This document shows positions 8,581 to 32,453 of a stretch of 64,000 bases of DNA, one piece after another; positions within the stretch are counted from its first letter, which is position 1, and the number at the start of each line of letters is the position of its first letter. The translations under genes and the position numbers were made by a program. A model generated the notes under the pieces. That model worked only from the letters and a program-made list of their open reading frames with translations. It did no database searches and had not been told where the DNA came from. The stretch is taken from IMG/VR virus record IMGVR_UViG_3300033153_015063, positions 178,597 to 242,596 of that record; one strand, 5' to 3'.

Positions 8581-9645
8581 TTAACTCTTTGGTCTGAACA
8601 ATCGTTGTTTGTAGTTGCGGTCAGGCTCTTCGCCACTTTTCAACCGCTTGTATTTATGCCACTCACAGAGAGAGTGTTCGATGTTGATTAGTGATAGCTC
8701 TCTCACGGGTGGATACCAGCTCTCATCTCCGGCATAGTAATCCCTTTCATTCTCATACTTATCGTCGTCCCAGTAGTGTTCCCGTTCGACGTCCAGGGAT
8801 ATCTCAATGAAAGATGGGTGTTGTGGGGTGTTGCGTAGATACTTGAAATCATGTCCCAACCTTTTGAAGTGCTTCCGTTGACTTTTACAGAGATAGGTGA
8901 TTGCCTTTACATAATCCCGTTGCCCCAGTCTGTTTTTATCTTTCCTTGAAGCGAGATATTCAAGTCCCGATTTTGCACCTGGTCCTGGATCTACGAAATC
9001 ATTTTCTGAAAACGGATTGTTGTTTGAGATAGTGAGATAGTAGTTATAGTCGATGGCGATTTCAAAGGCGAGAAATCTTGAGATAAGAGAAATATCCTGT
9101 AGTGCCTCCCATATTCTACGTATAGTCCCAGCCCCATCTATTTGTCTGTAATATAAATTAAGATGTTTTTTGAGGTCTCGTTCTATCACTTCAACGAAAA
9201 TAGTGGTTAGTTTGTTATCTGTCCCAGCTACTTTGTGGGTGTGGCTAGGCGAGAAAACCTGTTGATTGTGGTCGTTGGACCACTCAGAGACGACATCAAC
9301 CATCGCCTCCCCATCCCACTCCCCCGGGTCCTGTAAACCCATGAAAATCATGGTTTCCGGGTGGTTTATCAGGCGGTAGAGGATTATGTTGAACAGGATC
9401 TTCATCCCAACTTCATCTGGGTCATCATCGGGGTTGTTGATAGGTAAGATGATGTTCTCAATGATGAACCTGGTCCCTCGGTCAAGCTCTCGATAGACGT
9501 TGGAGAAGTGGTACTTCGAGAGGATAGGGTCCTTGGTCCAGGATGCTACTTCCTTCGGGTGTTGACGCTGATGCCATATCTCCTGACGTTCATAAACAAA
9601 GGACCAGAACTCGTCCATCATATCTGTGTGTATTTGTATAGACAC
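8581..9645 (-). CDS. DNA base-modification protein of the aGPT-Pplase1 / 5-hmdU DNA kinase helical-domain family
   Basis: FVYERQEIW...WTKDPILSKYHFSNVYRELDRGT, GPGAKSGL and IEHSLCEWHKY match the motifs of this family as I recall them. Confidence 0.75.
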   Translation of the reverse strand: MSIQIHTDMMDEFWSFVYERQEIWHQRQHPKEVASWTKDPILSKYHFSNVYRELDRGTRFIIENIILPINNPDDDPDEVGMKILFNIILYRLINHPETMIFMGLQDPGEWDGEAMVDVVSEWSNDHNQQVFSPSHTHKVAGTDNKLTTIFVEVIERDLKKHLNLYYRQIDGAGTIRRIWEALQDISLISRFLAFEIAIDYNYYLTISNNNPFSENDFVDPGPGAKSGLEYLASRKDKNRLGQRDYVKAITYLCKSQRKHFKRLGHDFKYLRNTPQHPSFIEISLDVEREHYWDDDKYENERDYYAGDESWYPPVRELSLINIEHSLCEWHKYKRLKSGEEPDRNYKQRLFRPKS

Positions 9646-9742
9646 AGAATGTAAATGGCCGAGAGAGATTAAAAAGATAGCGGGTTGTTTTTGAGTGGCG
9701 ACTCAGACTTCGAGGTCACGAGCTCCAGACCCTCGGAGCGGG

Positions 9743-10372
9743 CTAACGTATCAGCCCTCTGTAGCCAATGGGGTTCCCATCCTCGGTTTGGACCAGCTCA
9801 TTGGGGGACCAGAGGTCCTTCCGATTCGGGGACTCTTTTCGGACCATCCACGACACGATGTAGGCCACTCCTACTTTGGGGGGAGGGAGGTTCTGAACTT
9901 GACCATAGATGGAACGATAGAGTGAGATTCCTCTGGTTTTCCTCAGTAACGTTGATGGTATGGTCACTCTGGCTACTTGCCCAGATGGGGGGATGATGAT
10001 TCCTTCATCTTCATCGGAAATGATCCCACAGGCCATCAGGTTGACGAACTCCACCATATCCTTTTTCTTCGCCCATTCCTTGCACTCTTCCCGGGTTGTG
10101 GCCCAGAGACCATCATCGTCCCAGGGGAGGACGTGAGACTCGTCCCTGTCTCCACGTTCCCAGTGGCTACCTTCATAGATCCTGATAAACAGATCACCTT
10201 TATCACCCCTGCACAGATGCCAGTCATCCTCGTCCCAATACTCCTGGTCCGATGGGTTAGGAGTAAGATTTGCATCAAACACAATCTCGTGAATCGTGTT
10301 CATTTCATCCTCGTCCACATAGAAGATGGATACGGTCTCACTCTCTCCCTCTTGCTTCGTTTCATCCGTCAC
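9743..10372 (-). CDS. acidic N-terminal domain plus conserved phage hypothetical domain
   Basis: IPPSGQVARV...LPPPKVGVAYIVS...RKDLWSP pattern seen in many phage proteins; preceded by the promoter cassette. Confidence 0.6.
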   Translation of the reverse strand: MTDETKQEGESETVSIFYVDEDEMNTIHEIVFDANLTPNPSDQEYWDEDDWHLCRGDKGDLFIRIYEGSHWERGDRDESHVLPWDDDGLWATTREECKEWAKKKDMVEFVNLMACGIISDEDEGIIIPPSGQVARVTIPSTLLRKTRGISLYRSIYGQVQNLPPPKVGVAYIVSWMVRKESPNRKDLWSPNELVQTEDGNPIGYRGLIR

Positions 10373-10409
10373 ATAATCACCTGCCGTTTCATCCTTGTCG
10401 ATAATCAGC

Positions 10410-10450
10410 CTTTATATAGTTTCATGGTTTTGAACCGTAAAAAGCGTAAA
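10410..10450 (-). promoter_or_regulatory. conserved promoter cassette, copy A (TTTACGCTTTTTACGGTT-N-TGAAACTATATAAAG)
   Basis: Motif recurs 7 times in intergenic DNA; contains a BRE/TATA-like element upstream of an RBS and start codon. Confidence 0.8.
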
Positions 10451-10534
10451 AGGATTGTTAGTTAGATGACCCGGACCTTGCGGCGAAGTGCTCGTAAGGT
10501 TCTCACTCCGTTCCATTTCCTGATGAGATATTTG

Positions 10535-11878: not shown

Positions 11879-11890
11879 GTTATCGCCTAC

Positions 11891-16393: not shown

Positions 16394-17143
16394 CTATTCA
16401 GTGTTTTCCAGGAGTCGGTTATTCAACTCTCGTTCACTATCAGCCAACTTGTTGAGCTCGTCAGCAACCCATTTCCAATCCCGGACAAGCTTCTGGTCTT
16501 CTGGTTCTCCACCATCTTCTCCTAATATTCGTAGTGGTTTATTTTCATCATCAAACTCGACCAGTACCCAGTGAAAATCATCATACAATTCTTTTTCTTT
16601 TTTATAGTATGTATAGTTGAGAATTTTCTGTTTGATTAAATCATCAGTGCTCATCACCTGGAATCTAACTACTCTCTTGTCCACTCCACCCAACTGTTCC
16701 CGGGCGAAGTTGAGTATCTCCTGCCAGTCCTCAATTTTCTTGGGCATCCTCTCGATGTCCTTCCGAACACACGCCTCGCACTGGTGGGCTTTTGAGTCAT
16801 CTCTTCTGGTCTTGTAAAGCTTCTCGGTCAGACCGTCGCACCACACACACTCATAACCCTGGAGTTGGAAACAAGTTTCCTGGCCGGTTCTGTGCCCACA
16901 GATAGACATGTAGACCCGTTCACACTTTGGGCAGACCAGGAAGAGGTCCGATTGACTGTCATCAGGAATAGAAGTCCTGTTGGCCGTGTTCAATTCTTCT
17001 CCGCACTTACACTCGATGACCTCGATGGCCGCCTGCTTTTCCACCACCAATGGCGTGTGATACTTTTCATAATCATTGTTCCATGCCATCTTTACCACAC
17101 CCCACCTCGTTGTCGTCCTGCCTCTATGGAAAGATTTTTCCAC
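16394..17143 (-). CDS. multi-zinc-finger hypothetical protein
   Basis: Several CxxC pairs; true start probably at MAWNND. Confidence 0.55.
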   Translation of the reverse strand: MEKSFHRGRTTTRWGVVKMAWNNDYEKYHTPLVVEKQAAIEVIECKCGEELNTANRTSIPDDSQSDLFLVCPKCERVYMSICGHRTGQETCFQLQGYECVWCDGLTEKLYKTRRDDSKAHQCEACVRKDIERMPKKIEDWQEILNFAREQLGGVDKRVVRFQVMSTDDLIKQKILNYTYYKKEKELYDDFHWVLVEFDDENKPLRILGEDGGEPEDQKLVRDWKWVADELNKLADSERELNNRLLENTE

Positions 17144-17655
17144 ATTGTCAGGTAGGCATTATGTGGACTCTTATCGTCATCTGTTATTCCACGTGCTACT
17201 CTTCTGAATATTTCAAGTAGTGCGTCGGTTTCGTCGAGGTATCGTAGATACCTGTCTTTCTCCATCATCCAGGGTGCCTTGTCAGTGATGTTGTCGTAAC
17301 GGTCTACCATCTTCAGGAGTTGAACCTCCCATCGTGCTGTTCTCATCCTCTTCAGCATATCAGCCTTCCGTTCCTTACGGGCCAGGCGGTTGTCATCTGT
17401 TACACCGACCACGATATCACCAACCACTTCTCCGAACTCAGAACGGATTGTTCCGTAGTTTACCCCACAATCTTCGATGGTATCATGTAGGAGAGCTGCT
17501 ATCACAACTCCATCGTATCGTTCGAAACCGAGTTCCCGAAGTGTCTCTGCAACCCTGATAGGATGGATGACGTAGGGGTCACCGGTTGTATCTCGTGTCT
17601 GGTGCCTGTGCTTCTCCATAGAGAACAGAAGAGCTTTGATGTAGATGTTGGTCAT
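17092..17655 (-). CDS. HD-domain hydrolase, SpoT/Mesh1-like
   Basis: HRHQTR...PYVIHPIRVA, AALLHDTIED, VTDD and LKMVDRYDN motifs. Confidence 0.8.
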   Translation of the reverse strand: MTNIYIKALLFSMEKHRHQTRDTTGDPYVIHPIRVAETLRELGFERYDGVVIAALLHDTIEDCGVNYGTIRSEFGEVVGDIVVGVTDDNRLARKERKADMLKRMRTARWEVQLLKMVDRYDNITDKAPWMMEKDRYLRYLDETDALLEIFRRVARGITDDDKSPHNAYLTMWKNLSIEAGRQRGGVW

Positions 17656-18197
17656 GGTTTCTCACTCCTTGGTTCAGTGTATGCTTTCAGCCATGCAAGA
17701 GCCACGATGAGTAGGGTCTTGAGCGGGGTGACTTCTTCGCCTTCAGGTATCTGGGTGACCATTTTAACAAAGTCAGTATCTTTCGGACGGAGCTGTACGA
17801 CCTTTAGGTGACTCATAACCCACGCCCCCAGGGGTTTTGATACACTTATAGGCCACTCCTCGAAGTTGAGAAAGTCCTGCACATCAGGAATCCAGAGTAG
17901 GTTGTGGTAAGGAACGGTGATGAGCTGACCTTTTATCTCTTCGACACAATCAATCATGTCCTGTCGGATGTCGTTGGTCTTGACGATGGATACGATACGA
18001 GGACTGTACTCCGGTTTTTTCTTGTCGAGGAGATGTATCTGAGGGAACCAGAAAGCCCTGCGTCCGAACCTGGGCCATCGTTCGTTGGGTAGTTTTTCCT
18101 GGGTCACTACCAGACAAACCTTAGCCAGAGCTCGAAGGTCGGGGTCCTCGATGAGTTCCAGGTTACGTTCAATCCATTTCTCCTCTCCATCTCTCAT
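17652..18197 (-). CDS. hypothetical protein
   Basis: Operon context, 4-bp overlaps. Confidence 0.55.
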   Translation of the reverse strand: MRDGEEKWIERNLELIEDPDLRALAKVCLVVTQEKLPNERWPRFGRRAFWFPQIHLLDKKKPEYSPRIVSIVKTNDIRQDMIDCVEEIKGQLITVPYHNLLWIPDVQDFLNFEEWPISVSKPLGAWVMSHLKVVQLRPKDTDFVKMVTQIPEGEEVTPLKTLLIVALAWLKAYTEPRSEKP

Positions 18198-18661
18198 GTA
18201 TCTACCTGCCTCAGGTTGTTATCTGCGATGAATCCCAATGCAAGAAACTCGGTTTTGAAAGAGTTAAGCCAATAGCTAGACCCAACTATCTGGACTGCGT
18301 AGACTTCTCCCCCTGTCTCAGTGGTGTGGTTGATAAACACTGGTATATCCTCAACCACACATATGGATAGTAAATACTCTACCTGTTCTTTGGAACTACT
18401 GATGTATGGGAGACCATCGTCCACAATCATTTTCCCTCTATCTCCATCTTTCACATTATTACCAGTTTGTAGTGCAAGTTCCCAGATTAATCTATGAAAT
18501 GCTTCGATGGCCCTGATACAGTTCTTGCAAGGTTTCCCATCACATACCCCGACGTCTTTCAATTCGATTTCAATCTTCGGGCTACACATAGCAGTTCCAC
18601 CAGTTGTGGTGTAGTGACTCTTCGAGAGTGGTTTATTATGGGACTTCCCCCACCACTTCAT
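18194..18661 (-). CDS. hypothetical protein
   Basis: Operon context. Confidence 0.5.
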   Translation of the reverse strand: MKWWGKSHNKPLSKSHYTTTGGTAMCSPKIEIELKDVGVCDGKPCKNCIRAIEAFHRLIWELALQTGNNVKDGDRGKMIVDDGLPYISSSKEQVEYLLSICVVEDIPVFINHTTETGGEVYAVQIVGSSYWLNSFKTEFLALGFIADNNLRQVDT

Positions 18662-19645
18662 TTACAATACCTCAACTGTGCCTTTCTCCAGGTCCATTCT
18701 CACGGAGCTGTTATGCTCCAACTTTTTGGTAGCCTCTCCTGTTCCGACTATCACCGCAAGATGAACTCCACGCTTCGCCCATTCGATGGTCTGAATTGAT
18801 GCATGGCATGTCCTGGACCCATAGTCGGTAATTATACCGGCGACCACATCAAAAAGCGGTGTGAGTGATGGAGAGAAGTGTTCACAGACCACGATATCCA
18901 CTTTCTCGATTTCTCTGGATAACATCATCTCAACCATCTCATTGATGGATGACTCTGGATACTCTGGATTCCCTTCCATCAGAACAAATACCTTTCCTTC
19001 GTAACCACTCTTCAAGGAATAAGGAGTGATGTCAGTGATTATACCGAGACCAGCGACCACATCATTATTTCTTTCCTTGGTCTCGACAACTTCCTGGTCC
19101 CAGTACTGCGTCCCTTCTCCGACAAACAATCGTTTTCCTGCTAAATCTATGCATTCCTGGGGGTTAAAGCCTCGCTCTAGGCAAAACCTTAGGAGGTGGA
19201 TAATGGTCTCTCCTATGGTGCTTTTTTCGTCGTTTTCTGAGCCGTATGGAGTGGCCCTGGGGTTGTAGGTTGGGTCGTGGCACACCCGCCGATGGATATC
19301 CCCGAGCTGCCCCTGGATGACCGATAGAGTGTAGAGTGGGTCCTTGCTGTGTTGAGTAGCCTCACACTCCCTGACGCCACTCTTCTCAACAGAGTAGCAA
19401 TGTTTTGTATAATATTCTTTGACAGTACCTGCGATGCTGATGTTGATAGGTGGTATCACCTTCATTTCGTCTATATCTTTCATTCGGTGGTAGATACCCT
19501 CGACAACTTCCAGTTGTTCCAGGGGGAGTTCAGGTAGACCGGGGGTTGTGGGTGTGAATGTAGGTGATTGCAATTTCTGGGCGTTGTGGTCCCTCATGGC
19601 TTGAAGAAATGAGAGAACATCTTTGAAGGCACGGAGTTCGTCCAT
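18662..19645 (-). CDS. fusion of a MazG-like helical domain and a PEP-utilising enzyme mobile (phospho-His swivel) domain
   Basis: C-terminal GIITDYGSRTCHASI...VIVGTGEAT...VRMDLEKGTV matches the PEP-utiliser mobile domain; QGQLGDI...TIGETII is MazG-like but weaker. Confidence 0.7.
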   Translation of the reverse strand: MDELRAFKDVLSFLQAMRDHNAQKLQSPTFTPTTPGLPELPLEQLEVVEGIYHRMKDIDEMKVIPPINISIAGTVKEYYTKHCYSVEKSGVRECEATQHSKDPLYTLSVIQGQLGDIHRRVCHDPTYNPRATPYGSENDEKSTIGETIIHLLRFCLERGFNPQECIDLAGKRLFVGEGTQYWDQEVVETKERNNDVVAGLGIITDITPYSLKSGYEGKVFVLMEGNPEYPESSINEMVEMMLSREIEKVDIVVCEHFSPSLTPLFDVVAGIITDYGSRTCHASIQTIEWAKRGVHLAVIVGTGEATKKLEHNSSVRMDLEKGTVEVL

Positions 19646-19704: not shown

Positions 19705-21717
19705 CTATCCGACCCGGGCCATGATGGTCCGTTGGATGAGTTTCAGGAACTCGGTAGGCAGGTCTTCGGTATTCTCGATACTGATGCTTCTCTTGTAGTA
19801 CTGCTTGACAGGGCTACCGTCGATGCCGATCCCAATGATGTTATCATTGGCGTACGAGCTCAGAACAGAGTGAAGGATACTTGAAGCGTCCATACTCTCG
19901 CCTTTCCACGAAGAACCCTGTGATGGCATCCCATCAGAGGTAACCAACAGGAACTTTTCTTGTTCTGGTCTGTTGTTGAGGCGGGTCATGGCGTAGTGGA
20001 TGGAAGCACCATCGTTGTTCATACAGCCCCCCGGGTCATCGACCACCTTGAACTTTCTACGTTCGTATTCGGCGTCGAATGGTTTGGGGACCCAGGTCTG
20101 AACAGTGTCACCGGCTGCCCCGAACATCTGAACCTCGAACGGGATGCCGAGTTGGTTCAGGACCTCACAGAAGAGTAGTACCGCCTCGCAAGCTTTGTTT
20201 GTCTTGTTACTACCCCACGACCCCATCGACCCCGACCGGTCCACGATGACGCTGAAAACAACATCGAGTGCTTTTCCGCCCTTCCGCTGCTTGAAGATGC
20301 GGTTGTTGAAGGTCAACGCCTTGATGAGACGCTTTCCGTTCAGTTTACCCCGGGTCTGACCACCGACCATCTTTTTACGGGACCTCTTTGCCGCTTCGAT
20401 GATGTTCTGGAGTTTGCGGGATGTCAGATTAACAAGCGGAGCGACCTTTTTTAACAGGTGCCAGTATCGTTCTGGTCTGTCGATACATTCGTGACTGACC
20501 CATTTTGTTGTACCATCTGCTATGGAAAGATTCGTGCAATCTTTTTTGGTATCTTGATCCTGCTTCCTGTCCTTTTTCTCTCTATCCACCTCTTCGTTGA
20601 TTTCTGGGAGCTCATCAGAAATATCAGATTCCAACTTTTCCTTTTTCTTCTCCATCATCTCGGTCAAGATCTCTTCGTCAGACTTTTTTCCATCCCCATC
20701 CTGCTTTTCTTTCTCGTCTTTCTTATCACCATCTTTACCAGAACCACCATCTTTCTCATCGGCGTCTTTGCCGCTTTCCTTACTGGAGCTGCCCCCCTCA
20801 TCTTCCCCCTCTCCTTTCTTTTTGTTATGAGTACCACCTTTCCCCTCTTTCCCTTCCTTATCCCGGGCTTTTTCAATTGCGTTATCTCGGGCCTGTTCGA
20901 CGGTTGTGGTGATATCAACGTCCTCGCCTTCACTGTCCCCAGGCTGCATCTGGGTAACAAAATCGGGCATATCGGTCTTTTCAGCCCGGTCTTCGGCGGA
21001 TTTCATCTTCTTTTCGATGATAGCCGCTGCTTCAATGACCTTCCAGAGACACGCCTTCGTGTTTAGCGTCATAGCCGCCTCTTGCATGATGCCAAGTGTA
21101 TCAGCATACAGCTTTTTGGCTGCGTCATTGCTGAACGGGGGCGGTTCACGATGGATGATGACCTTGATAGCCAGGGCGGCAATGAGTTGTTTCATGTAGT
21201 CTCCGCCAAGGGTAGACTCATTGGCCCATTGCCGCCGGTAGATACGCTCATGGTCAAGATAGAAATCCTCGGCTATCCCTGGAAGGCTAGTTGCCATACA
21301 GTTGTTGATTCTGTCGTCTTCGGAGATGTTCAGCAGATCCTTGACGAGAGTGAGTGCCTTCACGTTCTCGTTGTTCTGCTTGTTCCATTTGTTGACTACC
21401 TCTTTCATGCCTTTTTCCTTTACTACAGTGAAATCCGAGAATTTCACGTGGCCCACTTCATGGTAGTTGTCGGCCTTCTGTGTTGCCAGGACGTCCAATG
21501 GATCTGAGTATTCAACCCATGATCGTTCACAGATAGCAATGGTGTTGCCATCAGTATGTGACGACCCACTATCCCAGTGGTATTTGATGGCCCTGCCGGC
21601 GAGAATGTTACCGGTCTTACGGAGTCTGGTCAACCGCACGGTCTTTCCCGATGCCGATGGCAACCTCTTTGAGAACCATGCAGCTGGGAACTTTTCTGCT
21701 TGGACATGTTCTGCCAT
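19705..21717 (-). CDS. CobT/NorD-like vWA-domain protein (MoxR partner)
   Basis: N-terminal HEVGH, charged linker, C-terminal MIDAS DRSGSM...TSDG. Confidence 0.85.
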   Translation of the reverse strand: MAEHVQAEKFPAAWFSKRLPSASGKTVRLTRLRKTGNILAGRAIKYHWDSGSSHTDGNTIAICERSWVEYSDPLDVLATQKADNYHEVGHVKFSDFTVVKEKGMKEVVNKWNKQNNENVKALTLVKDLLNISEDDRINNCMATSLPGIAEDFYLDHERIYRRQWANESTLGGDYMKQLIAALAIKVIIHREPPPFSNDAAKKLYADTLGIMQEAAMTLNTKACLWKVIEAAAIIEKKMKSAEDRAEKTDMPDFVTQMQPGDSEGEDVDITTTVEQARDNAIEKARDKEGKEGKGGTHNKKKGEGEDEGGSSSKESGKDADEKDGGSGKDGDKKDEKEKQDGDGKKSDEEILTEMMEKKKEKLESDISDELPEINEEVDREKKDRKQDQDTKKDCTNLSIADGTTKWVSHECIDRPERYWHLLKKVAPLVNLTSRKLQNIIEAAKRSRKKMVGGQTRGKLNGKRLIKALTFNNRIFKQRKGGKALDVVFSVIVDRSGSMGSWGSNKTNKACEAVLLFCEVLNQLGIPFEVQMFGAAGDTVQTWVPKPFDAEYERRKFKVVDDPGGCMNNDGASIHYAMTRLNNRPEQEKFLLVTSDGMPSQGSSWKGESMDASSILHSVLSSYANDNIIGIGIDGSPVKQYYKRSISIENTEDLPTEFLKLIQRTIMARVG

Positions 21718-24263: not shown

Positions 24264-25019
24264 CTACACCTTTACAAACTCCTGACCGTTCCAGGCCAGC
24301 CCATGGTTCATCAGGAGACGGGGCTCGTGGACCTCATCACTTCTACCACAGTAAATTAAAATGACTCCTTCTTGTTTGTCGGGTGGTTTTGTTCTCAACT
24401 TGTTGTCATAGATAACTTTCTTTGTATTACGATGTGTTATACACTCCATAGTATAACAATCCTGTCTCTTTATCATATTTAGTGCTTCAATCGACTTCGG
24501 AGTGAGTTTTTTTGGTTTTTTAACTCGTAACAGGCCCCTGAACATCATGCAGCCTGGGCGATGCCCACAATAATCCTTTCCTACAGATGAACCATAGCTC
24601 CATCTCACCTGAACACTTTCTCCTAACTTTTTTCCTACCTCTTCCCATGAGAAAGACGCATACCTTTTAACCTGCTTCAGCCATCTATCTATAGTTATTT
24701 CCCAAGTATAGTGATACTTCACTTTGTCCCGGTTATGGGTTTCCACTTCACTCTTGTAGTATTTCAGTGCATCTACCTCGGTCCCATCTACACCGCCTGT
24801 CAGGAAATAGAATCGAGTCATCTCGTCCCATGAATCCCAGAGTTCCTGAGGCGTCTCTGCGGTACCATAGGTTGATACGAAGCGTTGATAATCCTTATCG
24901 GTGAAGTGGAACCACGTATCTAGTTCCATCTCGTAACGATAGTGCTTCTTACAAAATGGGCACCAGATAGAATTTCTATATTTCTTTGCTTCTTTACCAC
25001 AATCAGGGCAATGAGACAT
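24264..25019 (-). CDS. hypothetical protein with N-terminal zinc ribbon
   Basis: Start moved to ATG 25019 (MSHCPDCGK) to avoid a 200-bp overlap with the MoxR gene. Confidence 0.6.
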   Translation of the reverse strand: MSHCPDCGKEAKKYRNSIWCPFCKKHYRYEMELDTWFHFTDKDYQRFVSTYGTAETPQELWDSWDEMTRFYFLTGGVDGTEVDALKYYKSEVETHNRDKVKYHYTWEITIDRWLKQVKRYASFSWEEVGKKLGESVQVRWSYGSSVGKDYCGHRPGCMMFRGLLRVKKPKKLTPKSIEALNMIKRQDCYTMECITHRNTKKVIYDNKLRTKPPDKQEGVILIYCGRSDEVHEPRLLMNHGLAWNGQEFVKV

Positions 25020-25089
25020 AGGTCCCTTGTGGGGCCGAACCCACAGCCATCCAAGGAGGCTCCACTCCATAGCGGAAGGGAGAGAAAAA

Positions 25090-26499
25090 TCAGAAATTGG
25101 TGTTAAAAACGTCCAGGATCGCTTTCTTATCATCTTCACGGAATAAATGATGGGTTGTAAAACTGTAGGCGGTGTGAACATCAAAATCGAGGCAGGCCTC
25201 GGCCCACATGATAAGGTGTCGGGTTGTGATGGTTGACCGAATGTCACTATCCCAGTTTTTGTATGCCGTGCGGATATCCTTGGCAAATCTCATCATGGCT
25301 GGATAGACAACATTGTGTTCGTCCTGGAAACCAGAGTAGTGCTTGACACACTCGATTTCATCGTCCTTTTCCAGATAGTCCATCTCCATGATGACACCGA
25401 AGCGGTCTTTGTCAGCAAAGTTGAGCTCGTGTGTTCCGCTATGTTCTCCGGTGTGGGATGGGTTCATTGTTGCGAAGAACCTGAAGTTCTGGTGAGCTCT
25501 GATTACATCATGTCCTTGTTGGGCCAGGGTGATGGAACGGGCTCCATCAAGGAGAGAACGAAGGATGAACAGGACTGTGTCCTCAGCTGCATTGATTTCG
25601 TCGAACGTAATCCAGTGCCCGAGCTTCATAGCGACGACGAGGGCACCATCGACCCATTTTGTCACAGGATTTCCACTCTCACCTTCGTCCAGGATGAATT
25701 GCCCCAGGATTTCATCTGGGGAAGTATGGCCGGACAGGTTGATACGCCAGTAGGGGATCTTTTCCATCCCAGCCAGATGCTCTATGGCCACAGATTTTCC
25801 ACAACCGGGGGGACCGACGAGAAGGGTGTTTTTGTTCTTCTTGACACCCCATCTGACGGCCCCGAGGATAGTTACGTCGATGTCAGGTAGACCATCGACC
25901 TTCAGATCCTGGTCGTAGTACTTGTCGATGGTCGGAACCATTTCAGAGAAATCTCTGAACACAACCTCCTCACCCTTCTTTTGTTCCTTCTGTGGTTTGT
26001 GAGTGGTTGTACTCTGTTGTCCGTCCTGTATCTGGAGGAGCTGCCCGAACAGGTCGGGGTCCGTGTCTTTCATCTGCACGATGAACTTTACCTTCTCCTC
26101 GAAGGGGAGTGAGCTGTAGGTGTCGAAGATGTACTTTGCCTGGGTCACTGTTGCGGACTTTCCAGGGACCCCTACGACCCCGGTACCTGCGGTATCGGCC
26201 AGTATCTCAACGGGATGCCATCCCATCGCCTTTACCAACCCCTTCGTCATGGTCCGGCTGTCTCGGAGGTCCCGGATGTTGTAGGTTCCTCCGTTTACGA
26301 GGGGGACCTCGCTTTTTACAGCAATACGAAGGCTACCTCGATAACCATTGAACCACACTATGGTATGGTTCCCGCCACGCTCCATGACCACGTCGGTCCC
26401 TTCTGGGGGGAGTTCGATTCCATCAAACTCGGAGGTCCAGTCGACCTCCTTGGATGCTCTGTCCGAACCAAGTGTTTGTGAGTTATTTTCACTCATCAT
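25090..26499 (-). CDS. MoxR/CobS/CbbQ-type AAA+ ATPase
   Basis: GPPGCGKS, ITFDEIN, FFATMNP and DRF motifs. Confidence 0.9.
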   Translation of the reverse strand: MMSENNSQTLGSDRASKEVDWTSEFDGIELPPEGTDVVMERGGNHTIVWFNGYRGSLRIAVKSEVPLVNGGTYNIRDLRDSRTMTKGLVKAMGWHPVEILADTAGTGVVGVPGKSATVTQAKYIFDTYSSLPFEEKVKFIVQMKDTDPDLFGQLLQIQDGQQSTTTHKPQKEQKKGEEVVFRDFSEMVPTIDKYYDQDLKVDGLPDIDVTILGAVRWGVKKNKNTLLVGPPGCGKSVAIEHLAGMEKIPYWRINLSGHTSPDEILGQFILDEGESGNPVTKWVDGALVVAMKLGHWITFDEINAAEDTVLFILRSLLDGARSITLAQQGHDVIRAHQNFRFFATMNPSHTGEHSGTHELNFADKDRFGVIMEMDYLEKDDEIECVKHYSGFQDEHNVVYPAMMRFAKDIRTAYKNWDSDIRSTITTRHLIMWAEACLDFDVHTAYSFTTHHLFREDDKKAILDVFNTNF

Positions 26500-26616: not shown

Positions 26617-27444
26617 TCAGAAACCGAGAACAAAAGGGTCCCTCCCATCTACATTCAGACCCAAGTTTTCCATGACGTCGATGGCGTCAGTATCTATGTC
26701 GATGCCGATATAGTGCCTGTCGTTGTCTCTGGCCATTCGTAGTGATGTTCCTGATCCTGCGAAGGGGTCGAGAACCAGGTCTCCGGGGTTCGAAAAAGCA
26801 AGGATGATGTCTCTGGCCAGATCATCGGGCATCGTCGCCGAGTGTTGCAATTTAACTTTGTTACCCTCGGTGTTACTGGTGTTGTAGAACCAGACTGTGC
26901 CTCTACACTTCATGTCACCCTGGACCTTTTTCTCGATAGGGACCCGTTTACCTGATGTCAGGGTCTGGGTCCCATGCCAGGTTTCGCCAGCGTGTTTGGC
27001 CGGGACCATCAATAATTCCTTGTGGTAGACTCTTGGCTTGATGGTTCCCTTCCCGGTCTGTTTGACGAAGGCGAGGATATACTCGTGGTCGACCCGGAAA
27101 CGGTCCTGCCACCATGCCCCAGGCCTACCGTGACGGTGATATATGATGTCTGCCCATAGGGACCACCCCAGACTCTCCCAGTCATCCACCAGATATCTGG
27201 TGGTCCCCGTTACCCGACCTTCCTGATGGGAATCCCGCATGACTACCCAGGCCATACCTCGCTCTACTGTGAGGGCATAGAGATTCCTTCCTATATACCT
27301 CAAATATTCCCTTCCCACCTCCCTCTTCCTGATACCGTCGTAGGGTGGACTGGTCACTGTAAGATGGATACTTTCCTTTCCCAATTCGAGAATCTCGGAG
27401 AGCTTGATGCCACTGTCCTTGTGATAGATGATATCCTTTTTCAT
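26617..27444 (-). CDS. DNA methyltransferase (N4-C/N6-A, beta class)
   Basis: TSPPY, HSATMP and VLDPFAGSGT. Confidence 0.9.
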   Translation of the reverse strand: MKKDIIYHKDSGIKLSEILELGKESIHLTVTSPPYDGIRKREVGREYLRYIGRNLYALTVERGMAWVVMRDSHQEGRVTGTTRYLVDDWESLGWSLWADIIYHRHGRPGAWWQDRFRVDHEYILAFVKQTGKGTIKPRVYHKELLMVPAKHAGETWHGTQTLTSGKRVPIEKKVQGDMKCRGTVWFYNTSNTEGNKVKLQHSATMPDDLARDIILAFSNPGDLVLDPFAGSGTSLRMARDNDRHYIGIDIDTDAIDVMENLGLNVDGRDPFVLGF

Positions 27445-28853: not shown

Positions 28854-29309
28854 CTAATGTTCAGTCTTATGGATGACGATGAAATTATCTTCTTTCAATA
28901 TCACTTCGAGAACGGGACGGACCTGGTCCCAATCAAGACCACCGCAACCGCATCCTGGTCGTGGGATAGCAACAGTAGGCCGTCGTGGTCGTGGAAGATG
29001 CATCATCCATTCACCCCTGAGCTCCATGCAACTGGCCCTTATCAGTTCCAGGGTTGCCTTGTCACGCCAGTGTTTTTTCACTGGAAAAGAAAAAATGGTT
29101 TTACCTTTCCAAGCCCCTATCGGGGTAACATCACAACCCATACGAATCGCCTTACCAAGGTTGATATCGACGCCAGGGACCCGGTTCACAGCCTCGGCTG
29201 CACACCCTCTACCCATCACAGCTCGTCCATCACTCTTCGTGGTCTTGTTGGTTGTGATACAAAGCCAGTCGGCGTCAATCTCCCATAGGTCTTCGTTTTT
29301 CTCTATCAA
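28854..29309 (-). CDS. macrodomain protein (DarG/Poa1-like ADP-ribose hydrolase)
   Basis: TTN...GRAVMGRGCA, FPVKKHWR and IPRPGCGCGGLDWDQV are macrodomain motifs. Confidence 0.85.
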   Translation of the reverse strand: MIEKNEDLWEIDADWLCITTNKTTKSDGRAVMGRGCAAEAVNRVPGVDINLGKAIRMGCDVTPIGAWKGKTIFSFPVKKHWRDKATLELIRASCMELRGEWMMHLPRPRRPTVAIPRPGCGCGGLDWDQVRPVLEVILKEDNFIVIHKTEH

Positions 29310-29462
29310 TCATAATCCTCAGTGAAACGCAAAGCCTTCGGGACGGATAAGGTCGTGTAGTTGCGGTTGCATTTTTCTATCAATTATAATCCTCAGTGAA
29401 ACAGGTTGAGGTTAAAATTTCCGGTACATGGTACTACTGTTGCATTTTCTATCAATTATAAT
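29292..29462 (-). CRISPR. CRISPR mini-array: 3 repeats, 2 spacers, no adjacent cas genes
   Basis: Full 37-nt repeat at 29366..29402 (plus: GTTGCATTTTTCTATCAATTATAATCCTCAGTGAAAC); 31/37-match copy at 29292..29328; truncated copy at 29439..29462; unique spacers of 37 and 36 nt; AT-rich leader-like DNA on the right. Confidence 0.75.
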
Positions 29463-29478
29463 TCGAAAATATAATATA

Positions 29479-30177
29479 TTATCCACGTTTCCACCATCGT
29501 TTCTTCTTCTTCGGTTCTCCTTTCTTCTTCATTGTATTCTTTTCCAGGATATTACTCATGTCATAAAGATAATTATCCCCCCTCGTCATAAACTCGAATG
29601 ACATACAGACAAAATCACTCTTCAACCCTCCGTCTTTTGTCGATCCAAGGATATATGAAACCATTCCAATCGCATATCGGCTAGTATATGATACCTCTTC
29701 TGGGTTGAACTCAAGCAATATCAACCAGTCGCCGATTCTGAAGTTACGGTCATTCTTACGCAGCTCGAAGCTCTTTTCTTTTTCCCAGACTGCGTTGAAA
29801 TGTTTCGGCCACGTCTTTATCTCATGCCCTCGGACTGGTATCGTGAATCCTGGAACATTTTCTCTTATGTCGGAAAGGGTCTCCCCATCAACGTTACCTT
29901 CTGCATCAAACAGTCCGATAGACATCGCAAACTCCATGTTTTTCTGGACGTGGATAATTGCAGTAAGGACATCTTTACGATACCGTTCTTCGGCGGTCTC
30001 CTGAGCCTCTTTCCACACCTCCATTTCATCTTCTCTCTTTTTTATTTCATCCTCCATCTCCTTGAATTTATCTGGCCCCATGATGTTCAATAGTTCATCC
30101 TTCAGACCAGTATCATCGTCTTTGAATATAGTAACTATACCACATCCAGGGGTTTTACATCGTGGCATTTTACACAT
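29479..30177 (-). CDS. ASCH/PUA-like (DUF3850-type) domain protein
   Basis: HEIKTWPKHFNAV...KSFELRKNDRNFRIGDWLILLEF. Confidence 0.7.
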   Translation of the reverse strand: MCKMPRCKTPGCGIVTIFKDDDTGLKDELLNIMGPDKFKEMEDEIKKREDEMEVWKEAQETAEERYRKDVLTAIIHVQKNMEFAMSIGLFDAEGNVDGETLSDIRENVPGFTIPVRGHEIKTWPKHFNAVWEKEKSFELRKNDRNFRIGDWLILLEFNPEEVSYTSRYAIGMVSYILGSTKDGGLKSDFVCMSFEFMTRGDNYLYDMSNILEKNTMKKKGEPKKKKRWWKRG

Positions 30178-30584
30178 TCAATGAAGTAAAAACCAGTTCC
30201 AGGGGCCGTGACATGCCGGTATTTACCACCACAGGAACAAGTGTTTAGGGATCGTTCCATCAACCCTAACCCTTCCATCTTCATCCTGTTATCGTACCAG
30301 AAGTTTCTGACGTCGTCTGGGACATCCAGTGTCGAAATACCATGAACCCGTTCTCCAGACGCCTCCGCCCCATAATAATACATGACCTTCAAACCAAAGA
30401 AAGCCAGTTTTAAAGTTAATATAGGATGGAAAATGAACTTGAGAAAACCACGTATGTCAAGCCATTTTCTGGTATTTCCAGGCCAGAGTTTGTCGATGAG
30501 GTCGGCCTTTTGTTGTGTTAAGCCGCAATGAGTACATTTATTGTTCTCAACTACCTTCCCACAACGAAAACAATTTTCCGGCAT
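30135..30584 (-). CDS. hypothetical protein with two zinc ribbons
   Basis: CFRCG...CTHCG and CSCGG...CVKC. Confidence 0.55.
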   Translation of the reverse strand: MPENCFRCGKVVENNKCTHCGLTQQKADLIDKLWPGNTRKWLDIRGFLKFIFHPILTLKLAFFGLKVMYYYGAEASGERVHGISTLDVPDDVRNFWYDNRMKMEGLGLMERSLNTCSCGGKYRHVTAPGTGFYFIECVKCHDVKPLDVV

Positions 30585-30593
30585 ATTATCCCT

Positions 30594-32453
30594 TCATTCT
30601 CCCTGAAACTCTCGTAGACATTTCTTGCCTTCCTCAGTCATCTTGAACTCGAAGCGGGCATACTCGAAGTGGTTGCCTTTCCCGGTGAATGTCCCCTCGG
30701 TAATGTTGGATGGGACGGCCATAGTCATCGCCAACCGTCCAAGGAAATCAGAGACGTAGTAAGGGTTATTGTTCTCAAAGAGCTCCTTCAGGAAGGCGGT
30801 CTGGGCCGGTGTGTTGGTGTTCTTCATCGACTCTGGACGTTCTTTCTTTTTCTCATCGAGGTGGACCTTGACTTCAGTCACTCTATCAAACTCGGAAAGT
30901 GCCTTCTTGGTCCGTTCTATCGCTTCTTTTTGACCAGGCCAGTCAGGTTCAGGTTCGTCTTTAACCATTTCTTTCTCCTCCTTCTCTACGATGTCAGATG
31001 ACTCACATTCGTTCTTGGTGATGATTGGGATCGGTTCCCACTTTGAAGTGTATTCAGTAAACAATACTTCATCCAGATTGTGTGTTTCGCAGTCCTTCAG
31101 TATCCTTTCTCTTATCCGGTGATTGGCGTTCAGTTTATCATAATCCTTTTTTTCCGTCAGACTTTCCATATAATCTTTGTCTTCAACGGACTCGTAGAGA
31201 CGTTGGGCCAACGACACCCACCATTCGTTTGTGACATAATCCAGATGGTCACAGGATAATTCGTACAATTGCATCTCTCGATACCAATCACAGGCAATGG
31301 CACGAAGCCAGAATCTCCAGTATGACCAGACTGGCTTCGTGATACCACCATAGAAAACCTTAGCTGTGGCATAGGAGAGAAGACCTGAATCGGTCCTGAT
31401 GATGGACCCTGGGAAGTCATTGACCATCGTTTTAATGATATCGTGACACCACTCCAGAACACCATTCATTTCTTCCTTGGTCATGGGTGGCATCGGTTCA
31501 GGGTCGAAGTGGTCATATATCTCAAACTGCTCAGCGATGATGTTTGGAATGATGTTCTTGTGTCTACTCATGTAGATGTGCATGTTGTTGGAGACCTGGT
31601 AGAACTTACCAACCTCAAGACCGAGACGGGATGCGACGAGTTGCTGGAAGATGGTGGGATCGAACAGGTCAAAAGGTAAACCCCAGATGGCGTCGTTGGA
31701 CCTGATGGTGCAATGCATATCAACCCGACCCTCTCGAACCTCGAACTGCCATGACATTGTGCAAGGCACGTACTGGCGGGAGTGGTCATGCATCGGGTTC
31801 CAGAAAGAGATAATGGCGTGGCGGGTTGTGGGGTCCCGCTGCAGCTTCTCGATACAGACCTCCAGTTGGTCCACCTCCCATGTCCTGACTGGTACCTCTT
31901 TACGAGATACGTGACAAATCTTGGGTTTCACTTGTTGTATCTGATGGGCGTTGTAAGAGTGGACGTTGTTCATCATCCAGCTCTCCTCGTAGTCATATTT
32001 GTGTGTCCAGTCGAGTTTGATGGGTAGGTCCCGGCCCGGCCAGTGTCTGATACGGTCACCATAGGTATAAGGACAGAGCTCTTTCTTCTCGTCTTTATCT
32101 GGTGGTTCTTGGTGATATTCGTCGTAAGGAATAGGACTCTGACGCCACTTCTCAATCAAGAGCCAGCGTTTGTGGTAGGGGTGGAAGTGATGGATGAATC
32201 CTGGGTTGAGACCGAGAAGGTAGTCCATAACCTCGACCAGGCAGACGCCGACCTGTTGACGGACGTTTGGGATGCCGCACCAGTTCTTCGTCGGATCTTC
32301 GAGAACCAGATGGAGAGAAGGGGCCTCTCGCATGGTCATTACTTTCTCCTTGTTCGGACCTTCAGGACGTTTGATTTTCAGTCCGTTGTTGGAGATGTAG
32401 TCGATGGTATCTCTTACTACTTCAGTAGAAGTATTACCGACAATACTCTTCAT
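30594..32453 (-). CDS. thymidylate synthase-family enzyme, probably a dCMP hydroxymethylase/methylase, with long C-terminal extension
   Basis: YTYGDRI, DPTTRHAII, catalytic VPC, RSNDAIWGLPFD (Asp at the E. coli ThyA Asn177 position) and NMHIY. Confidence 0.8.
   Translation of the reverse strand: MKSIVGNTSTEVVRDTIDYISNNGLKIKRPEGPNKEKVMTMREAPSLHLVLEDPTKNWCGIPNVRQQVGVCLVEVMDYLLGLNPGFIHHFHPYHKRWLLIEKWRQSPIPYDEYHQEPPDKDEKKELCPYTYGDRIRHWPGRDLPIKLDWTHKYDYEESWMMNNVHSYNAHQIQQVKPKICHVSRKEVPVRTWEVDQLEVCIEKLQRDPTTRHAIISFWNPMHDHSRQYVPCTMSWQFEVREGRVDMHCTIRSNDAIWGLPFDLFDPTIFQQLVASRLGLEVGKFYQVSNNMHIYMSRHKNIIPNIIAEQFEIYDHFDPEPMPPMTKEEMNGVLEWCHDIIKTMVNDFPGSIIRTDSGLLSYATAKVFYGGITKPVWSYWRFWLRAIACDWYREMQLYELSCDHLDYVTNEWWVSLAQRLYESVEDKDYMESLTEKKDYDKLNANHRIRERILKDCETHNLDEVLFTEYTSKWEPIPIITKNECESSDIVEKEEKEMVKDEPEPDWPGQKEAIERTKKALSEFDRVTEVKVHLDEKKKERPESMKNTNTPAQTAFLKELFENNNPYYVSDFLGRLAMTMAVPSNITEGTFTGKGNHFEYARFEFKMTEEGKKCLREFQGE

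What the first reader, a model, noticed from the sequence alone, without database searches (positions are those of the whole stretch)
8581..32453. Possible cytosine hypermodification pathway in an archaeal element
Seen: the thymidylate-synthase homologue has RSNDAIWGLPFD, with Asp where dUMP-specific enzymes have Asn. A separate gene encodes the helical aGPT-Pplase1/5-hmdU-kinase-associated domain. Established: Asp at this position confers dCMP specificity (T4 gp42 RSNDVVFGFRND), while aGPT-Pplase-family proteins are characterised in thymidine hypermodification of 5hmU phages. Inference: the combination suggests 5hmC (or 5mC) is made at the nucleotide level and then decorated on DNA by an enzyme family characterised on uracil. 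No P-loop hydroxymethyl-pyrimidine kinase is visible in the window.
Basis: partly seen in the sequence, partly recalled or inferred. Interest (0 to 1): 0.7.

Follow-up and report, generated by a model that had tools for sequence, protein, structure and literature searches.

The report
Cytosine-type thymidylate-synthase homologue plus hypermodification-family protein
A 243-kb virus most like archaeal tailed viruses has one thymidylate-synthase-like enzyme, built for cytosine rather than uracil, plus a protein family known only from thymine hypermodification, so it may decorate cytosine in a new way; no kinase, transferase or sugar enzyme was found, and plain 5-methylcytosine remains possible.

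Summary
Both observations are real. The 619-aa thymidylate-synthase (TS) homologue (30594-32453, minus strand) keeps the TS catalytic residues. It has Asp at the E. coli Asn177 position and Thr at His147, as T4 dCMP hydroxymethylase does. It is the only TS/ThyX gene in the 242.6-kb virus record. The protein at 8581-9645 is a full-length stand-alone PF18723 (former clade-1 aGPT-Pplase). Its model has a DNA-glycosylase-like fold, and it shares the Glu-x-x-Leu-Cys motif of the amino-acid:DNA transferases.

The pairing recurs. All 16 near-complete PF18723 viruses examined carry a TS homologue, and in 4 it is Asp-type only.

- The E. coli Leu143 position, acidic in hydroxymethylases, is Tyr here, so 5-methyl-dCMP is a live alternative.
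- In one other Asp-type virus the neighbouring enzyme is a close homologue of the Xp12 dCMP methylase.
- No P-loop 5-hmdU kinase, PF18724 transferase, glycosyltransferase or DHFR was found.
- Clade-1 proteins have no demonstrated activity.

New leads are a viral dCMP deaminase, a MazG, and a split PEP-synthase-like pair that could replace the missing kinase. That last idea is speculative. My verdict is a plausible new variant of a known kind, unproven.

The parts
30594..32453 (-). TS-family enzyme (P0001, 619 aa). The core spans roughly residues 10-330 with a large insertion, followed by a long C-terminal extension. Cytosine-type active site: Cys-Thr and Asp at E. coli positions 146/147/177, and Tyr at the Leu143 position.
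   Evidence: Pfam PF00303 E 9.5e-25; phrog_5131 over residues 131-424; alignments A6 and A7 with E. coli ThyA, T4 gp42, Xp12 and SP10 gp188; only TS gene in the record.
8581..9645 (-). Stand-alone PF18723 (HMUDK_hel, former clade-1 aGPT-Pplase) protein, P0002. It has a helix-hairpin-helix glycosylase-like fold. Glu323 is conserved (Glu in 58 of 66 homologues, Gln in 8); Cys327, Glu328 and Lys331 are invariant.
   Evidence: Pfam E 3.7e-48; 66-sequence alignment; AF2 model pLDDT 85.6; best solved match PaMx11 gp46 transferase, Z 10.8; hhalign against PF18724 proteins, E 5e-5, with the Glu and Cys aligned.
18662..19645 (-). Orphan protein P0003. Its N-terminal ~215 aa domain is unknown (a MazG-like shape is only a weak lead). 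Its C-terminal part is a PEP-utilizers phosphohistidine swivel domain (His in the motif TCHAS). Candidate phosphoryl carrier; its link to the pathway is inferred only.
   Evidence: Pfam PF00391 E 3.4e-13; only PEP synthases match, and only in the C-terminal part; no Pfam or PDB hit for residues 1-215; Atlas leads; the only swivel domain among 16 PF18723 viruses.
17092..17655 (-). HD_4 phosphohydrolase, in the same tightly packed minus-strand gene string as P0003 and PolB. Candidate nucleotide hydrolase. A homologue lies near the TS gene in a related contig (L106).
   Evidence: Pfam PF13328 E 1.6e-14; abutting or overlapping ORFs 16394-19645; L106 gene order.
29479..30177 (-). DUF3850/ASCH (PUA-like) protein two genes downstream of the TS homologue. 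Possibly a reader of modified nucleic acid (inference from the fold family).
   Evidence: Pfam PF12961 E 7.7e-21.
43288..46044 (-). Class II ribonucleotide reductase, which supplies deoxynucleotides (context).
   Evidence: Pfam PF02867 E 1.3e-123.
39858..40559 (-). HD-domain protein, a possible dNTP/dNMP hydrolase (context; specificity unknown).
   Evidence: Pfam PF01966 E 4e-9.
5992..7638 (-). N6/N4 DNA methyltransferase, one of at least nine in the genome (a second lies in this region at 26617-27444). This shows that the virus also relies on ordinary methylation.
   Evidence: Pfam PF01555.

Best explanation
The virus makes a C5-substituted deoxycytidylate before replication. Its only TS-family enzyme takes dCMP rather than dUMP and adds a one-carbon group from methylene-folate. 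The product is most likely hydroxymethyl, and possibly methyl. A viral MazG and HD hydrolases would shape the nucleotide pools, a dCMP deaminase would supply dUMP for host dTMP synthesis, and the viral PolB would incorporate the modified dCTP. After replication, the stand-alone PF18723 protein would bind the modified pyrimidine in DNA through its glycosylase-like fold. It would use its conserved Glu-x-x-Leu-Cys motif to attack C6 and exchange the group on the C5 methylene, as its relatives the amino-acid:DNA transferases do on phosphorylated 5-hydroxymethyluracil.

Shown here: the residues, the fold, the homology and the recurrent gene pairing. Inferred: the identity of the C5 group, action on DNA, the nucleophile that is added, and how (or whether) the hydroxyl is activated.
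For: - The TS core is intact: Glu58, Tyr94, Arg126, Cys146, Arg166, Ser167, Asp169, His207 and Tyr209 are all conserved. Asp replaces Asn177 and Thr replaces His147, as in T4 gp42.
- These two positions are the ones that separate modified-cytosine from unmodified phage contigs in MetaGPA (PMC8670742).
- 98 of the 150 nearest representatives in 1.84 billion proteins are Asp-type.
- There is a single TS gene, no ThyX and no DHFR.
- The long C-terminal extension is shared with L002-type homologues and with the SP10 TS homologue gp188. The best reference matches are the 'long' homologues L091 and L002.
- A deaminase and a MazG are present, which fits the TS/PRA-PH/deaminase network of cytosine-modifying phages.
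- PF18723 and TS are linked in 16 of 16 near-complete genomes and are often adjacent. Four of these genomes are Asp-only. One (L091) continues into UDP-sugar genes and a TET-associated glycosyltransferase.
- PF18723 resembles the transferase PaMx11 gp46 in fold and is homologous to PF18724 proteins in sequence, with the Glu and Cys aligned.
- The PF18723 domain forms the C-terminal half of SP10 gp186, a validated 5-hmdU DNA kinase (PMC8989533).
Against: - The Leu143-equivalent position is Tyr in P0001 and in both close relatives. 82 of 98 Asp-type representatives, T4 gp42 and SP10 gp188 have Asp/Glu there. PMC13326640 ties an acidic residue to oxygenated products.
- L074 pairs PF18723 with a close homologue of the Xp12 dCMP methylase (291 bits).
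- Clade-1 proteins were not needed for the reconstituted reactions in vitro.
- A PF18723 gene sits among housekeeping genes in a Woesearchaeota genome.
- No P-loop kinase, PF18724, TAGT, GT1 or GT2 was found in the record.
- The TS and PF18723 genes lie 21 kb apart here.
- At least nine N6/N4 methyltransferases suggest that the DNA is not fully shielded by a bulky modification.
- The genome may not be complete, so absences carry less weight.
Confidence: 0.4

Rival explanations
1. The DNA carries plain 5-methylcytosine, as in Xanthomonas phage Xp12. The TS homologue is a dCMP methyltransferase, and the PF18723 protein has another job. It could be a glycosylase-like quality-control or salvage enzyme, or a DNA-binding accessory. 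No hypermodified cytosine is made.
For: - Tyr, not Asp/Glu, sits at the Leu143 position, where a bulky residue is thought to exclude water. Xp12 also lacks an acidic residue there (Asn).
- L074 places PF18723 next to an Xp12-like enzyme.
- No kinase, transferase or glycosyltransferase was found.
- PF18723 occurs in cellular DPANN and Patescibacteria genomes without such pathways.
- The model's fold also resembles the queuine salvage glycosylase, Z 10.4.
Against: - There is no DHFR, which a methylase would need and which Xp12 carries next to its enzyme. The host could supply it.
- P0001 lacks the canonical short TS C-terminus, which by my own knowledge closes the site for hydride transfer. Instead it has the long extension of the SP10/L002-type homologues.
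- P0001 scores higher against L091 and L002 than against Xp12.
- The invariant Cys/Glu motif argues for a covalent pyrimidine enzyme.
Confidence: 0.27
2. The end product is a thymine-type modification reached by a detour. dCMP is hydroxymethylated, the viral dCMP deaminase converts 5hm-dCMP to 5hm-dUMP, 5hmU enters the DNA, and PF18723 acts on 5hmU as in known systems.
For: - A dCMP/cytidine deaminase is encoded (C1:168822-169550).
- Deaminases occur in 3 of 4 Asp-type but only 2 of 12 Asn-type PF18723 viruses. In G047 the deaminase lies within 1 kb of the TS gene.
- Every experimentally characterised PF18723 context is 5hmU.
- From my own knowledge, not tested here: T4 dCMP deaminase accepts 5hm-dCMP.
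Against: - Such deaminases are also standard in cytosine-modifying phages, where they supply dUMP (T4; MetaGPA network).
- There is no dTTP-depleting enzyme set and no PF18724 or kinase.
- G002 has no deaminase.
- The route has no precedent.
Confidence: 0.13
3. A split PEP-synthase-like dikinase replaces the missing P-loop kinase. It would consist of the stand-alone PPDK_N ATP-grasp protein (C1:55324-56157) and the swivel-His protein P0003. It would phosphorylate the 5-hydroxymethyl group (or a co-substrate), and PF18723 would then carry out the displacement.
For: - The record holds exactly one PPDK_N and one PEP-utilizers swivel domain, on separate genes.
- Full-length PEP synthases used as queries match only those two ORFs, so no PEP/pyruvate-binding domain was detected.
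- The order 'unknown domain then His domain', with a separate ATP-grasp protein, recalls rifampicin phosphotransferase and glucan-water dikinase, which phosphorylate hydroxyls (my own knowledge).
- P0003 lies 9 kb from P0002 in the replication gene block.
Against: - None of 15 other near-complete PF18723 viruses, and none of the 80 IMG/VR PF18723 loci, has a swivel or PPDK_N gene.
- PPDK_N lies 140 kb away, beside RelA/SpoT-like and CCA-enzyme-like genes, which suggests another role.
- P0003 has no full-length relatives.
Confidence: 0.1
4. The enzyme is an ordinary thymidylate synthase despite the Asp, and the DNA carries only methyltransferase marks.
For: - It is the only TS-family gene, and a virus of this size might be expected to make dTMP.
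- The genome carries many N6/N4 methyltransferases.
Against: - Asn177 to Asp switches specificity to dCMP in E. coli and L. casei TS, and the reverse change in T4 gp42 has the opposite effect (literature cited in PMC8670742).
- The strict Thr147/Asp177 versus Asn147/Asn177 covariation across 17 TS genes argues for a real specificity class.
Confidence: 0.05

Closest known systems
T4 gp42 deoxycytidylate hydroxymethylase (with gp56 dCTPase, cd deaminase and glucosyltransferases)
   Same: TS fold; catalytic Cys followed by Thr; Asp at the Asn177 position. The genome also encodes a MazG-type pyrophosphatase and a dCMP deaminase.
   Different: Very low similarity (17.6 bits). Tyr instead of Asp at the Leu143 position. 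619 aa, with an insertion and a long C-terminal extension. No glucosyltransferase was found. A gp1-type dNMP kinase was not specifically searched for; no small P-loop kinase turned up in the Walker-A scan.
Thymidine hypermodification systems of SP10, ViI, M6, PaMx11 and PhiW-14 (dUMP hydroxymethylase, P-loop 5-hmdU DNA kinase, PF18724 amino-acid:DNA transferase, clade-1 aGPT-Pplase/PF18723)
   Same: A PF18723 protein with all family-invariant residues. P0002 finds the homologous proteins in exactly these phages. The TS homologue shares the long C-terminal architecture of SP10 gp188.
   Different: The TS homologue is cytosine-type. No P-loop kinase, PF18724 transferase, PLP or radical-SAM partner was detected. 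The polymerase is PolB with RFC-like clamp loaders, not PolA.
Xanthomonas phage Xp12 dCMP methyltransferase (5mC replaces C)
   Same: Asp at the 177 position and no acidic residue at the 143 position. A deaminase is present in the genome.
   Different: Xp12 has Cys-Pro, a canonical short TS C-terminus and an adjacent DHFR. P0001 matches it no better than it matches E. coli ThyA (49 bits). The Xp12-like enzyme is the one in L074, not the one here.
RB69 gp48 / DLP3 gp80 flavin-dependent 5-hydroxy-dCMP synthases (PMC13326640)
   Same: A TS homologue with Asp at the 177 position in a virus that modifies cytosine at the nucleotide level.
   Different: Those enzymes have Glu at the 143 position and work with arabinosyltransferases. 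Here the residue is Tyr and no glycosyltransferase was found. No direct sequence comparison was made.
PaMx11 gp46 5-PmdU glycinyltransferase (PDB 8z2m/8z2n; PF18724)
   Same: Best structural match of the P0002 model (Foldseek probability 0.99; VIA Z 10.8 over 226 residues). Profile-profile E 5e-5, with the Glu-x-x-Leu-Cys motif aligned.
   Different: About 10% identity. A separate Pfam family. The substrate and the nucleophile of clade 1 are unknown.

Membership tests
Thymidylate synthase superfamily (PF00303) | Profile match above the curated cut-off | tested here: met
   87.7 bits against a cut-off of 24.3; 84.8 bits in the six-frame genome search.
Thymidylate synthase superfamily (PF00303) | Catalytic Cys146 and the nucleotide/folate-binding residues Glu58, Tyr94, Arg126, Arg166, Ser167, Asp169, His207 and Tyr209 | tested here: met
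   All are invariant columns in alignments A6 and A7, which include P0001.
dUMP-specific thymidylate synthase (ThyA proper) | Asn at position 177 and His at position 147 | tested here: not met
   Asp and Thr.
dCMP hydroxymethylase (T4 gp42 type) | Asp at the 177 position with Cys-Thr at the catalytic site | tested here: met
dCMP hydroxymethylase (T4 gp42 type) | Acidic residue at the E. coli Leu143 position (admits water to the methylene intermediate; PMC13326640) | tested here: not met
   Tyr in P0001, P0124 and P0126. Asp/Glu in 82 of 98 Asp-type representatives and in T4 gp42.
dCMP hydroxymethylase (T4 gp42 type) | Product is 5-hydroxymethyl-dCMP and the folate is released as tetrahydrofolate | not testable with these tools
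   Needs an enzyme assay.
dCMP methyltransferase (Xp12 type) | Close sequence kinship with the Xp12 enzyme, a canonical TS C-terminus and an associated DHFR | tested here: not met
   49 bits against Xp12, compared with 291 bits for L074. A long non-canonical C-terminus. No DHFR in the record.
PF18723 HMUDK_hel / clade-1 aGPT-Pplase | Full-length profile match and the family-invariant residues (R20, W36, N49, R52, E53, D55, R91, F191, D199, P222, G223, C327, E328, K331) | tested here: met
   E 3.7e-48; the C-terminal piece also matches; invariants in 66 of 66 sequences.
PF18723 HMUDK_hel / clade-1 aGPT-Pplase | Helix-hairpin-helix DNA-glycosylase-like fold | tested here: met
   AF2 model pLDDT 85.6. 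The best matches are PaMx11 gp46, the queuine salvage enzyme and the Ogg/AlkA/Mag glycosylases, at Z 8-11. The tool notes that for helical proteins Z below about 13 can be a common arrangement, but the hhalign result supports true kinship.
PF18723 HMUDK_hel / clade-1 aGPT-Pplase | Genomic linkage to a TS-family one-carbon transferase | tested here: met
   16 of 16 near-complete PF18723 viruses have one. Here the two genes lie 21 kb apart on the same strand.
Thymidine hypermodification system (5-HMUDK + AADT) | dUMP hydroxymethylase (Asn-type) | tested here: not met
   The only TS homologue is Asp-type.
Thymidine hypermodification system (5-HMUDK + AADT) | P-loop 5-hmdU DNA kinase | tested here: not met
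   No match to the SP10 gp186 kinase half at E<=1. No small P-loop kinase in the Walker-A scan. This was a single-sequence search, so a distant kinase could have been missed.
Thymidine hypermodification system (5-HMUDK + AADT) | PF18724 amino-acid:DNA transferase | tested here: not met
   No hit in G000. The same search finds it in 9 other PF18723 viruses.
PEP synthase / PPDK-type dikinase | ATP-grasp nucleotide-binding domain (PPDK_N) and a phosphohistidine swivel domain | tested here: met
   PPDK_N E 9.4e-53 on C1:55324-56157. PEP-utilizers E 3.4e-13 on P0003, with the His present. The two are on separate genes 140 kb apart.
PEP synthase / PPDK-type dikinase | PEP/pyruvate-binding C-terminal domain | tested here: not met
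   Full-length PEP synthases match only the two ORFs above. PF02896 does not appear in any Pfam scan.

The most novel reading that the evidence does not exclude
PF18723 proteins are base-flipping Cys/Glu enzymes that act on any C5-one-carbon pyrimidine in DNA, not only on 5hmU. Under this reading, this virus and about a quarter of PF18723-bearing viruses make a still undescribed hypermodified cytosine through a cytosine branch of the 'thymidine hypermodification' chemistry. In this virus the hydroxyl would be activated not by a P-loop kinase but by a split PEP-synthase-like dikinase (PPDK_N plus the swivel-His protein P0003).
Probability: 0.08. Interest if true: 0.85.

Novelty: new variant of a known kind. 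Interest (0 to 1): 0.55.

Why it matters
All published work on the aGPT-Pplase families that I could find concerns thymine. A cytosine branch would add a new class of DNA base modification and new enzymes for tagging 5hmC or 5mC in DNA. It would also extend this chemistry to a virus whose replication genes look archaeal. Even the conservative reading has value. It gives a sequence rule that splits PF18723-linked TS homologues into two classes: Thr147/Asp177 versus Asn147/Asn177. It also flags the Leu143 position as the residue to test for methyl versus hydroxymethyl output.

Tried and rejected
- **Close relatives of the TS homologue and of P0003 in IMG/VR.** Single-protein scans found none.
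- **Word-based homologue search for P0003.** It found only PEP synthases, matching the swivel domain. P0003 residues 1-215 have no Pfam or PDB hit. BLASTP against the MazG-like protein of L074 shows no similarity. The Atlas structural hits to MazG/PRA-PH are weak (TM about 0.4), so 'MazG-like' is a lead only.
- **Complex prediction of PPDK_N with P0003.** It gave no verdict (score 0.05). This is evidence neither for nor against binding.
- **PPDK_N or swivel genes near 80 other PF18723 loci.** None was found.
- **Atlas searches on the unknown neighbours 7686-8483 and 24264-25286.** Nothing usable came back.
- **A Walker-A 'thymidine-kinase-like' ORF at C1:119089-119424.** It proved to be an out-of-frame overlap inside a real gene.
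- **Public sequencing runs holding the TS gene.** None was listed, so read-level evidence could not be sought.
- **The Iyer et al. 2013 paper** could not be read because it is not held.
- **PF18725** turned out to be an unrelated HEPN family.
- **Tree of PF18723 proteins.** The three Asp-associated proteins then identified (a fourth, L094, is sister to L091) do not form one clade, but long branches make the tree weak. I draw no conclusion on the number of origins.
- **Limits of the genome survey.** The Pfam by-alignment scans skipped ORFs under 110 aa and two very long ORFs, and one MazG gene was missed by my ORF choice. Absences there are therefore soft.

Full report
**What the window is.** The window is the last 64 kb of a single-contig IMG/VR virus record of 242,596 bp with 46.6% G+C. 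Most genes lie on the minus strand. The flagged region is a replication and nucleotide-metabolism block. It holds family B DNA polymerase, two RFC-like clamp-loader subunits, a class II ribonucleotide reductase, helicases, a PD-(D/E)XK nuclease, CobS/CobT-like AAA/VWA proteins, two HD hydrolases and two N6/N4 DNA methyltransferases. PolB and the RFC small subunit find haloarchaeal tailed viruses (HRTV, HF1/HF2, HCTV-1, HVTV-1) as their best cultured relatives at 30-36% identity. It is not proven: the genome also carries a CCA-enzyme-like PolyA_pol+HD gene, a RelA/SpoT-like gene and a PolI-type 5'-3' exonuclease, which I would expect in bacteria or their phages.

**The thymidylate-synthase homologue.**
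- The motif RSNDAIWGLPFD occurs once, at 31692-31703 on the minus strand, in ORF 30594-32453 (619 aa). Pfam and PHROGs call this ORF a thymidylate synthase.
- I aligned it with E. coli ThyA, T4 gp42, the Xp12 enzyme and SP10 gp188, all taken from database records. It keeps Glu58, Tyr94, Arg126, Cys146, Arg166, Ser167, Asp169, His207 and Tyr209. It has Asp at Asn177 and Thr at His147, exactly as T4 gp42 does.
- MetaGPA found that positions 177 and 147 best separate TS homologues of cytosine-modified phage contigs from those of unmodified contigs. That paper also cites the mutagenesis work showing that Asn177/Asp sets dUMP versus dCMP specificity (PMC8670742).
- An exhaustive HMMER search of 1.84 billion representatives found only two close relatives (53-54% identity, both with GLPFD). 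Of the 150 nearest proteins, 98 are Asp-type.
- This is the only TS-family gene in the record. There is no ThyX, no DCD and no DHFR.
- I take cytosine specificity as likely, at about 0.8.

**Methyl, hydroxymethyl or hydroxyl?** This is unresolved.
- PMC13326640 reports that the E. coli Leu143 position is bulky and hydrophobic in methyl-forming enzymes. It is Asp/Glu in T4-like hydroxymethylases, in MilA and in the newly found 5-hydroxy-dCMP synthases.
- P0001 and its two close relatives have Tyr there. By contrast, 82 of 98 Asp-type representatives, T4 gp42, SP10 gp188, L002 and L091 have Asp/Glu. Xp12 has Asn. This counts against a hydroxymethylase.
- On the other side, P0001 lacks the canonical short TS C-terminus. 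It shares a long C-terminal extension with the SP10 gp188 and L002 type. It scores higher against L091 and L002 (69-74 bits) than against Xp12 or ThyA (49 bits). No DHFR is encoded.
- Given cytosine specificity, I put hydroxymethyl at roughly 0.45, methyl at 0.3 and other products at 0.25.

**The PF18723 protein.**
- ORF 8581-9645 matches PF18723 over its full length.
- tblastn places its homologues in SP10, ViI-like Ackermannviridae, and M6- and PaMx11-like Pseudomonas phages, which are the known thymidine hypermodifiers.
- In SP10 the domain is the C-terminal half of gp186. PMC8989533 lists gp186 as a P-loop 5-hmdU DNA kinase, which explains the present Pfam name.
- Stand-alone clade-1 proteins (ViI gp160, M6 gp55) were not needed for the reconstituted reactions in vitro, so their activity is unknown.
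- A 66-sequence alignment shows invariant Cys327, Glu328 and Lys331, and Glu323 in 58 of 66 sequences.
- The AF2 model (pLDDT 85.6) matches the transferase PaMx11 gp46 best (Foldseek probability 0.99; VIA Z 10.8), followed by the queuine salvage enzyme and HhH DNA glycosylases.
- Profile-profile comparison with six PF18724 proteins, taken from other viruses, gives E 5e-5 over 229 columns. It aligns IEHSLCE with METALCS. If the 'neighbouring' Glu of PMC8989533 is this aligned one, the motif contains the Cys and Glu shown there to be essential in M6 gp51 and ViI gp247.
- I therefore read P0002 as a probable covalent pyrimidine-C6 enzyme rather than a passive helical adaptor. This is inference.

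**Does the pairing recur?**
- Of 80 IMG/VR loci with a PF18723 gene, 31 have a TS homologue within 10 kb, usually just downstream. Two of those are Asp-type.
- At the level of whole records, all 16 near-complete PF18723 viruses carry a TS homologue. Four have only an Asp-type one: this virus, G001/L091, G047/L094 and G002/L074. Twelve are Asn-type. The covariation is strict: Cys-Thr (or Cys-Pro) goes with Asp, and Cys-Asn goes with Asn.
- In L091 the order is Asp-type TS, PF18723, UDP-glucose dehydrogenase, epimerase, methyltransferases and a TET-associated glycosyltransferase. That looks like a cytosine glycosylation cluster.
- In L074 the order is PF18723, a MazG-like protein and a close homologue of the Xp12 dCMP methylase.
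- PF18724 is present in only 3 of 15 complete PF18723 viruses, so PF18723 usually works without it.
- A PF18723 gene also sits among housekeeping genes of a Woesearchaeota genome, which warns against a single fixed function.

**The rest of the genome.**
- Found: a dCMP deaminase, a MazG, a Ham1-type pyrophosphatase, at least nine N6/N4 methyltransferases and a GmrSD_N protein. Also found were one stand-alone PPDK_N ATP-grasp protein at C1:55324-56157 and one swivel-His protein, P0003.
- Not found: a PF18724 transferase, a homologue of the SP10 kinase half, a credible small P-loop kinase, or TAGT, GT1 or GT2 glycosyltransferases.
- The PPDK_N/P0003 pair looks like a split dikinase with no PEP-binding domain and could in principle replace the missing kinase.
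- Against that idea, no other PF18723 virus has such genes. PPDK_N lies 140 kb away next to unrelated-looking genes. The complex prediction gave no verdict.
- Deaminases are present in 3 of 4 Asp-type but only 2 of 12 Asn-type viruses. This fits the usual cytosine-modification network. It also keeps alive a detour in which 5hm-dCMP is deaminated to 5hm-dUMP.

**Caveat on completeness.** The 64-bp 'direct terminal repeat' behind the 100% completeness call coincides with a dispersed repeat family of about 115 bp with more than 30 copies. One 114-bp copy is identical to the contig end. The contig may simply end in a repeat, so genes could be missing.

**Verdict.** The claim of a cytosine hypermodification pathway is a reasonable hypothesis and not more. 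I know of no published report that links PF18723 to cytosine: my searches for 'aGPT-Pplase' and 'HMUDK' returned only thymine work. I therefore class this as a new variant of a known kind, with moderate interest.

Noticed in passing
window 36512-36625 and 63887-64000; more than 30 copies across G000, e.g. window 32831-32955, 35707-35839, 41559-41680, 42295-42425, 46445-46552, 61537-61651: A dispersed repeat of about 115 bp (70-100% identity) lies at the 5' ends of many minus-strand ORFs and encodes a shared N-terminal peptide. The contig's 64-bp terminal repeat is part of this family, and a 114-bp copy identical to the contig end sits at window 36512-36625. The 'complete, DTR' call may therefore be an assembly artefact.
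   Followed up: partly
G000:C1:51972-56157 (+ strand; outside the window): A plus-strand gene string in a mostly minus-strand genome: a CCA-enzyme-like nucleotidyltransferase with an HD domain, a RelA/SpoT-like synthetase, an unknown 353-aa protein, and a stand-alone PPDK_N ATP-grasp protein.
   Followed up: partly
whole genome; window 5992-7638 and 26617-27444: At least nine N6/N4 DNA methyltransferase genes: six in the first 57 kb, one at 121-178 kb and two in the window. The genome also has a GmrSD_N (type IV restriction-like) protein and a TnpB-like (Cas12f1-like TNB) hit.
   Followed up: no
window 19705-21717 and 25090-26499; second pair in C1:121-178 kb: Two sets of CobT-like VWA and AAA_5 (CobS/MoxR-like) proteins, plus a TROVE/Ro60 protein with a vWA domain.
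   Followed up: no
L074:10001-13034 (IMG/VR record G002, 54.8 kb, DTR): A PF18723 gene, a PRA-PH/MazG-like gene and a close homologue of the Xp12 dCMP methyltransferase (291 bits) lie side by side. This virus probably has 5mC DNA yet keeps a 'hypermodification' family protein.
   Followed up: partly
L091:8887-15928 (IMG/VR record G001, 75.9 kb, DTR): An Asp-type TS homologue is followed directly by PF18723, UDP-glucose dehydrogenase, an epimerase/dehydratase, an FkbM methyltransferase, a TET-associated glycosyltransferase and another methyltransferase. This is a likely glycosylated-cytosine cluster that contains PF18723.
   Followed up: partly
L103:10001-10951 (Woesearchaeota MAG contig, 186 kb): A PF18723 gene stands alone among cellular housekeeping genes (RNase HII, RNA polymerase subunit N, Rpr2, endonuclease V), with no TS or kinase nearby.
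   Followed up: no
window 49036-50190 (-): An ORF with an AAA+-type Walker A motif overlaps the plus-strand ORFs 49192-49734 and 49819-51258 that a longest-ORF choice prefers. The gene calls here are uncertain.
   Followed up: no
L106 (JGI sample 3300041075, 17.6-kb contig) and L001 (same sample, 116.7-kb contig): The nearest TS relative with DNA context (P0126; next to DCD, HAD, HD_4, a methyltransferase and AAA_5) and the nearest PF18723 relative (P0005) come from the same metagenome but from different contigs. They may belong to one related virus.
   Followed up: no
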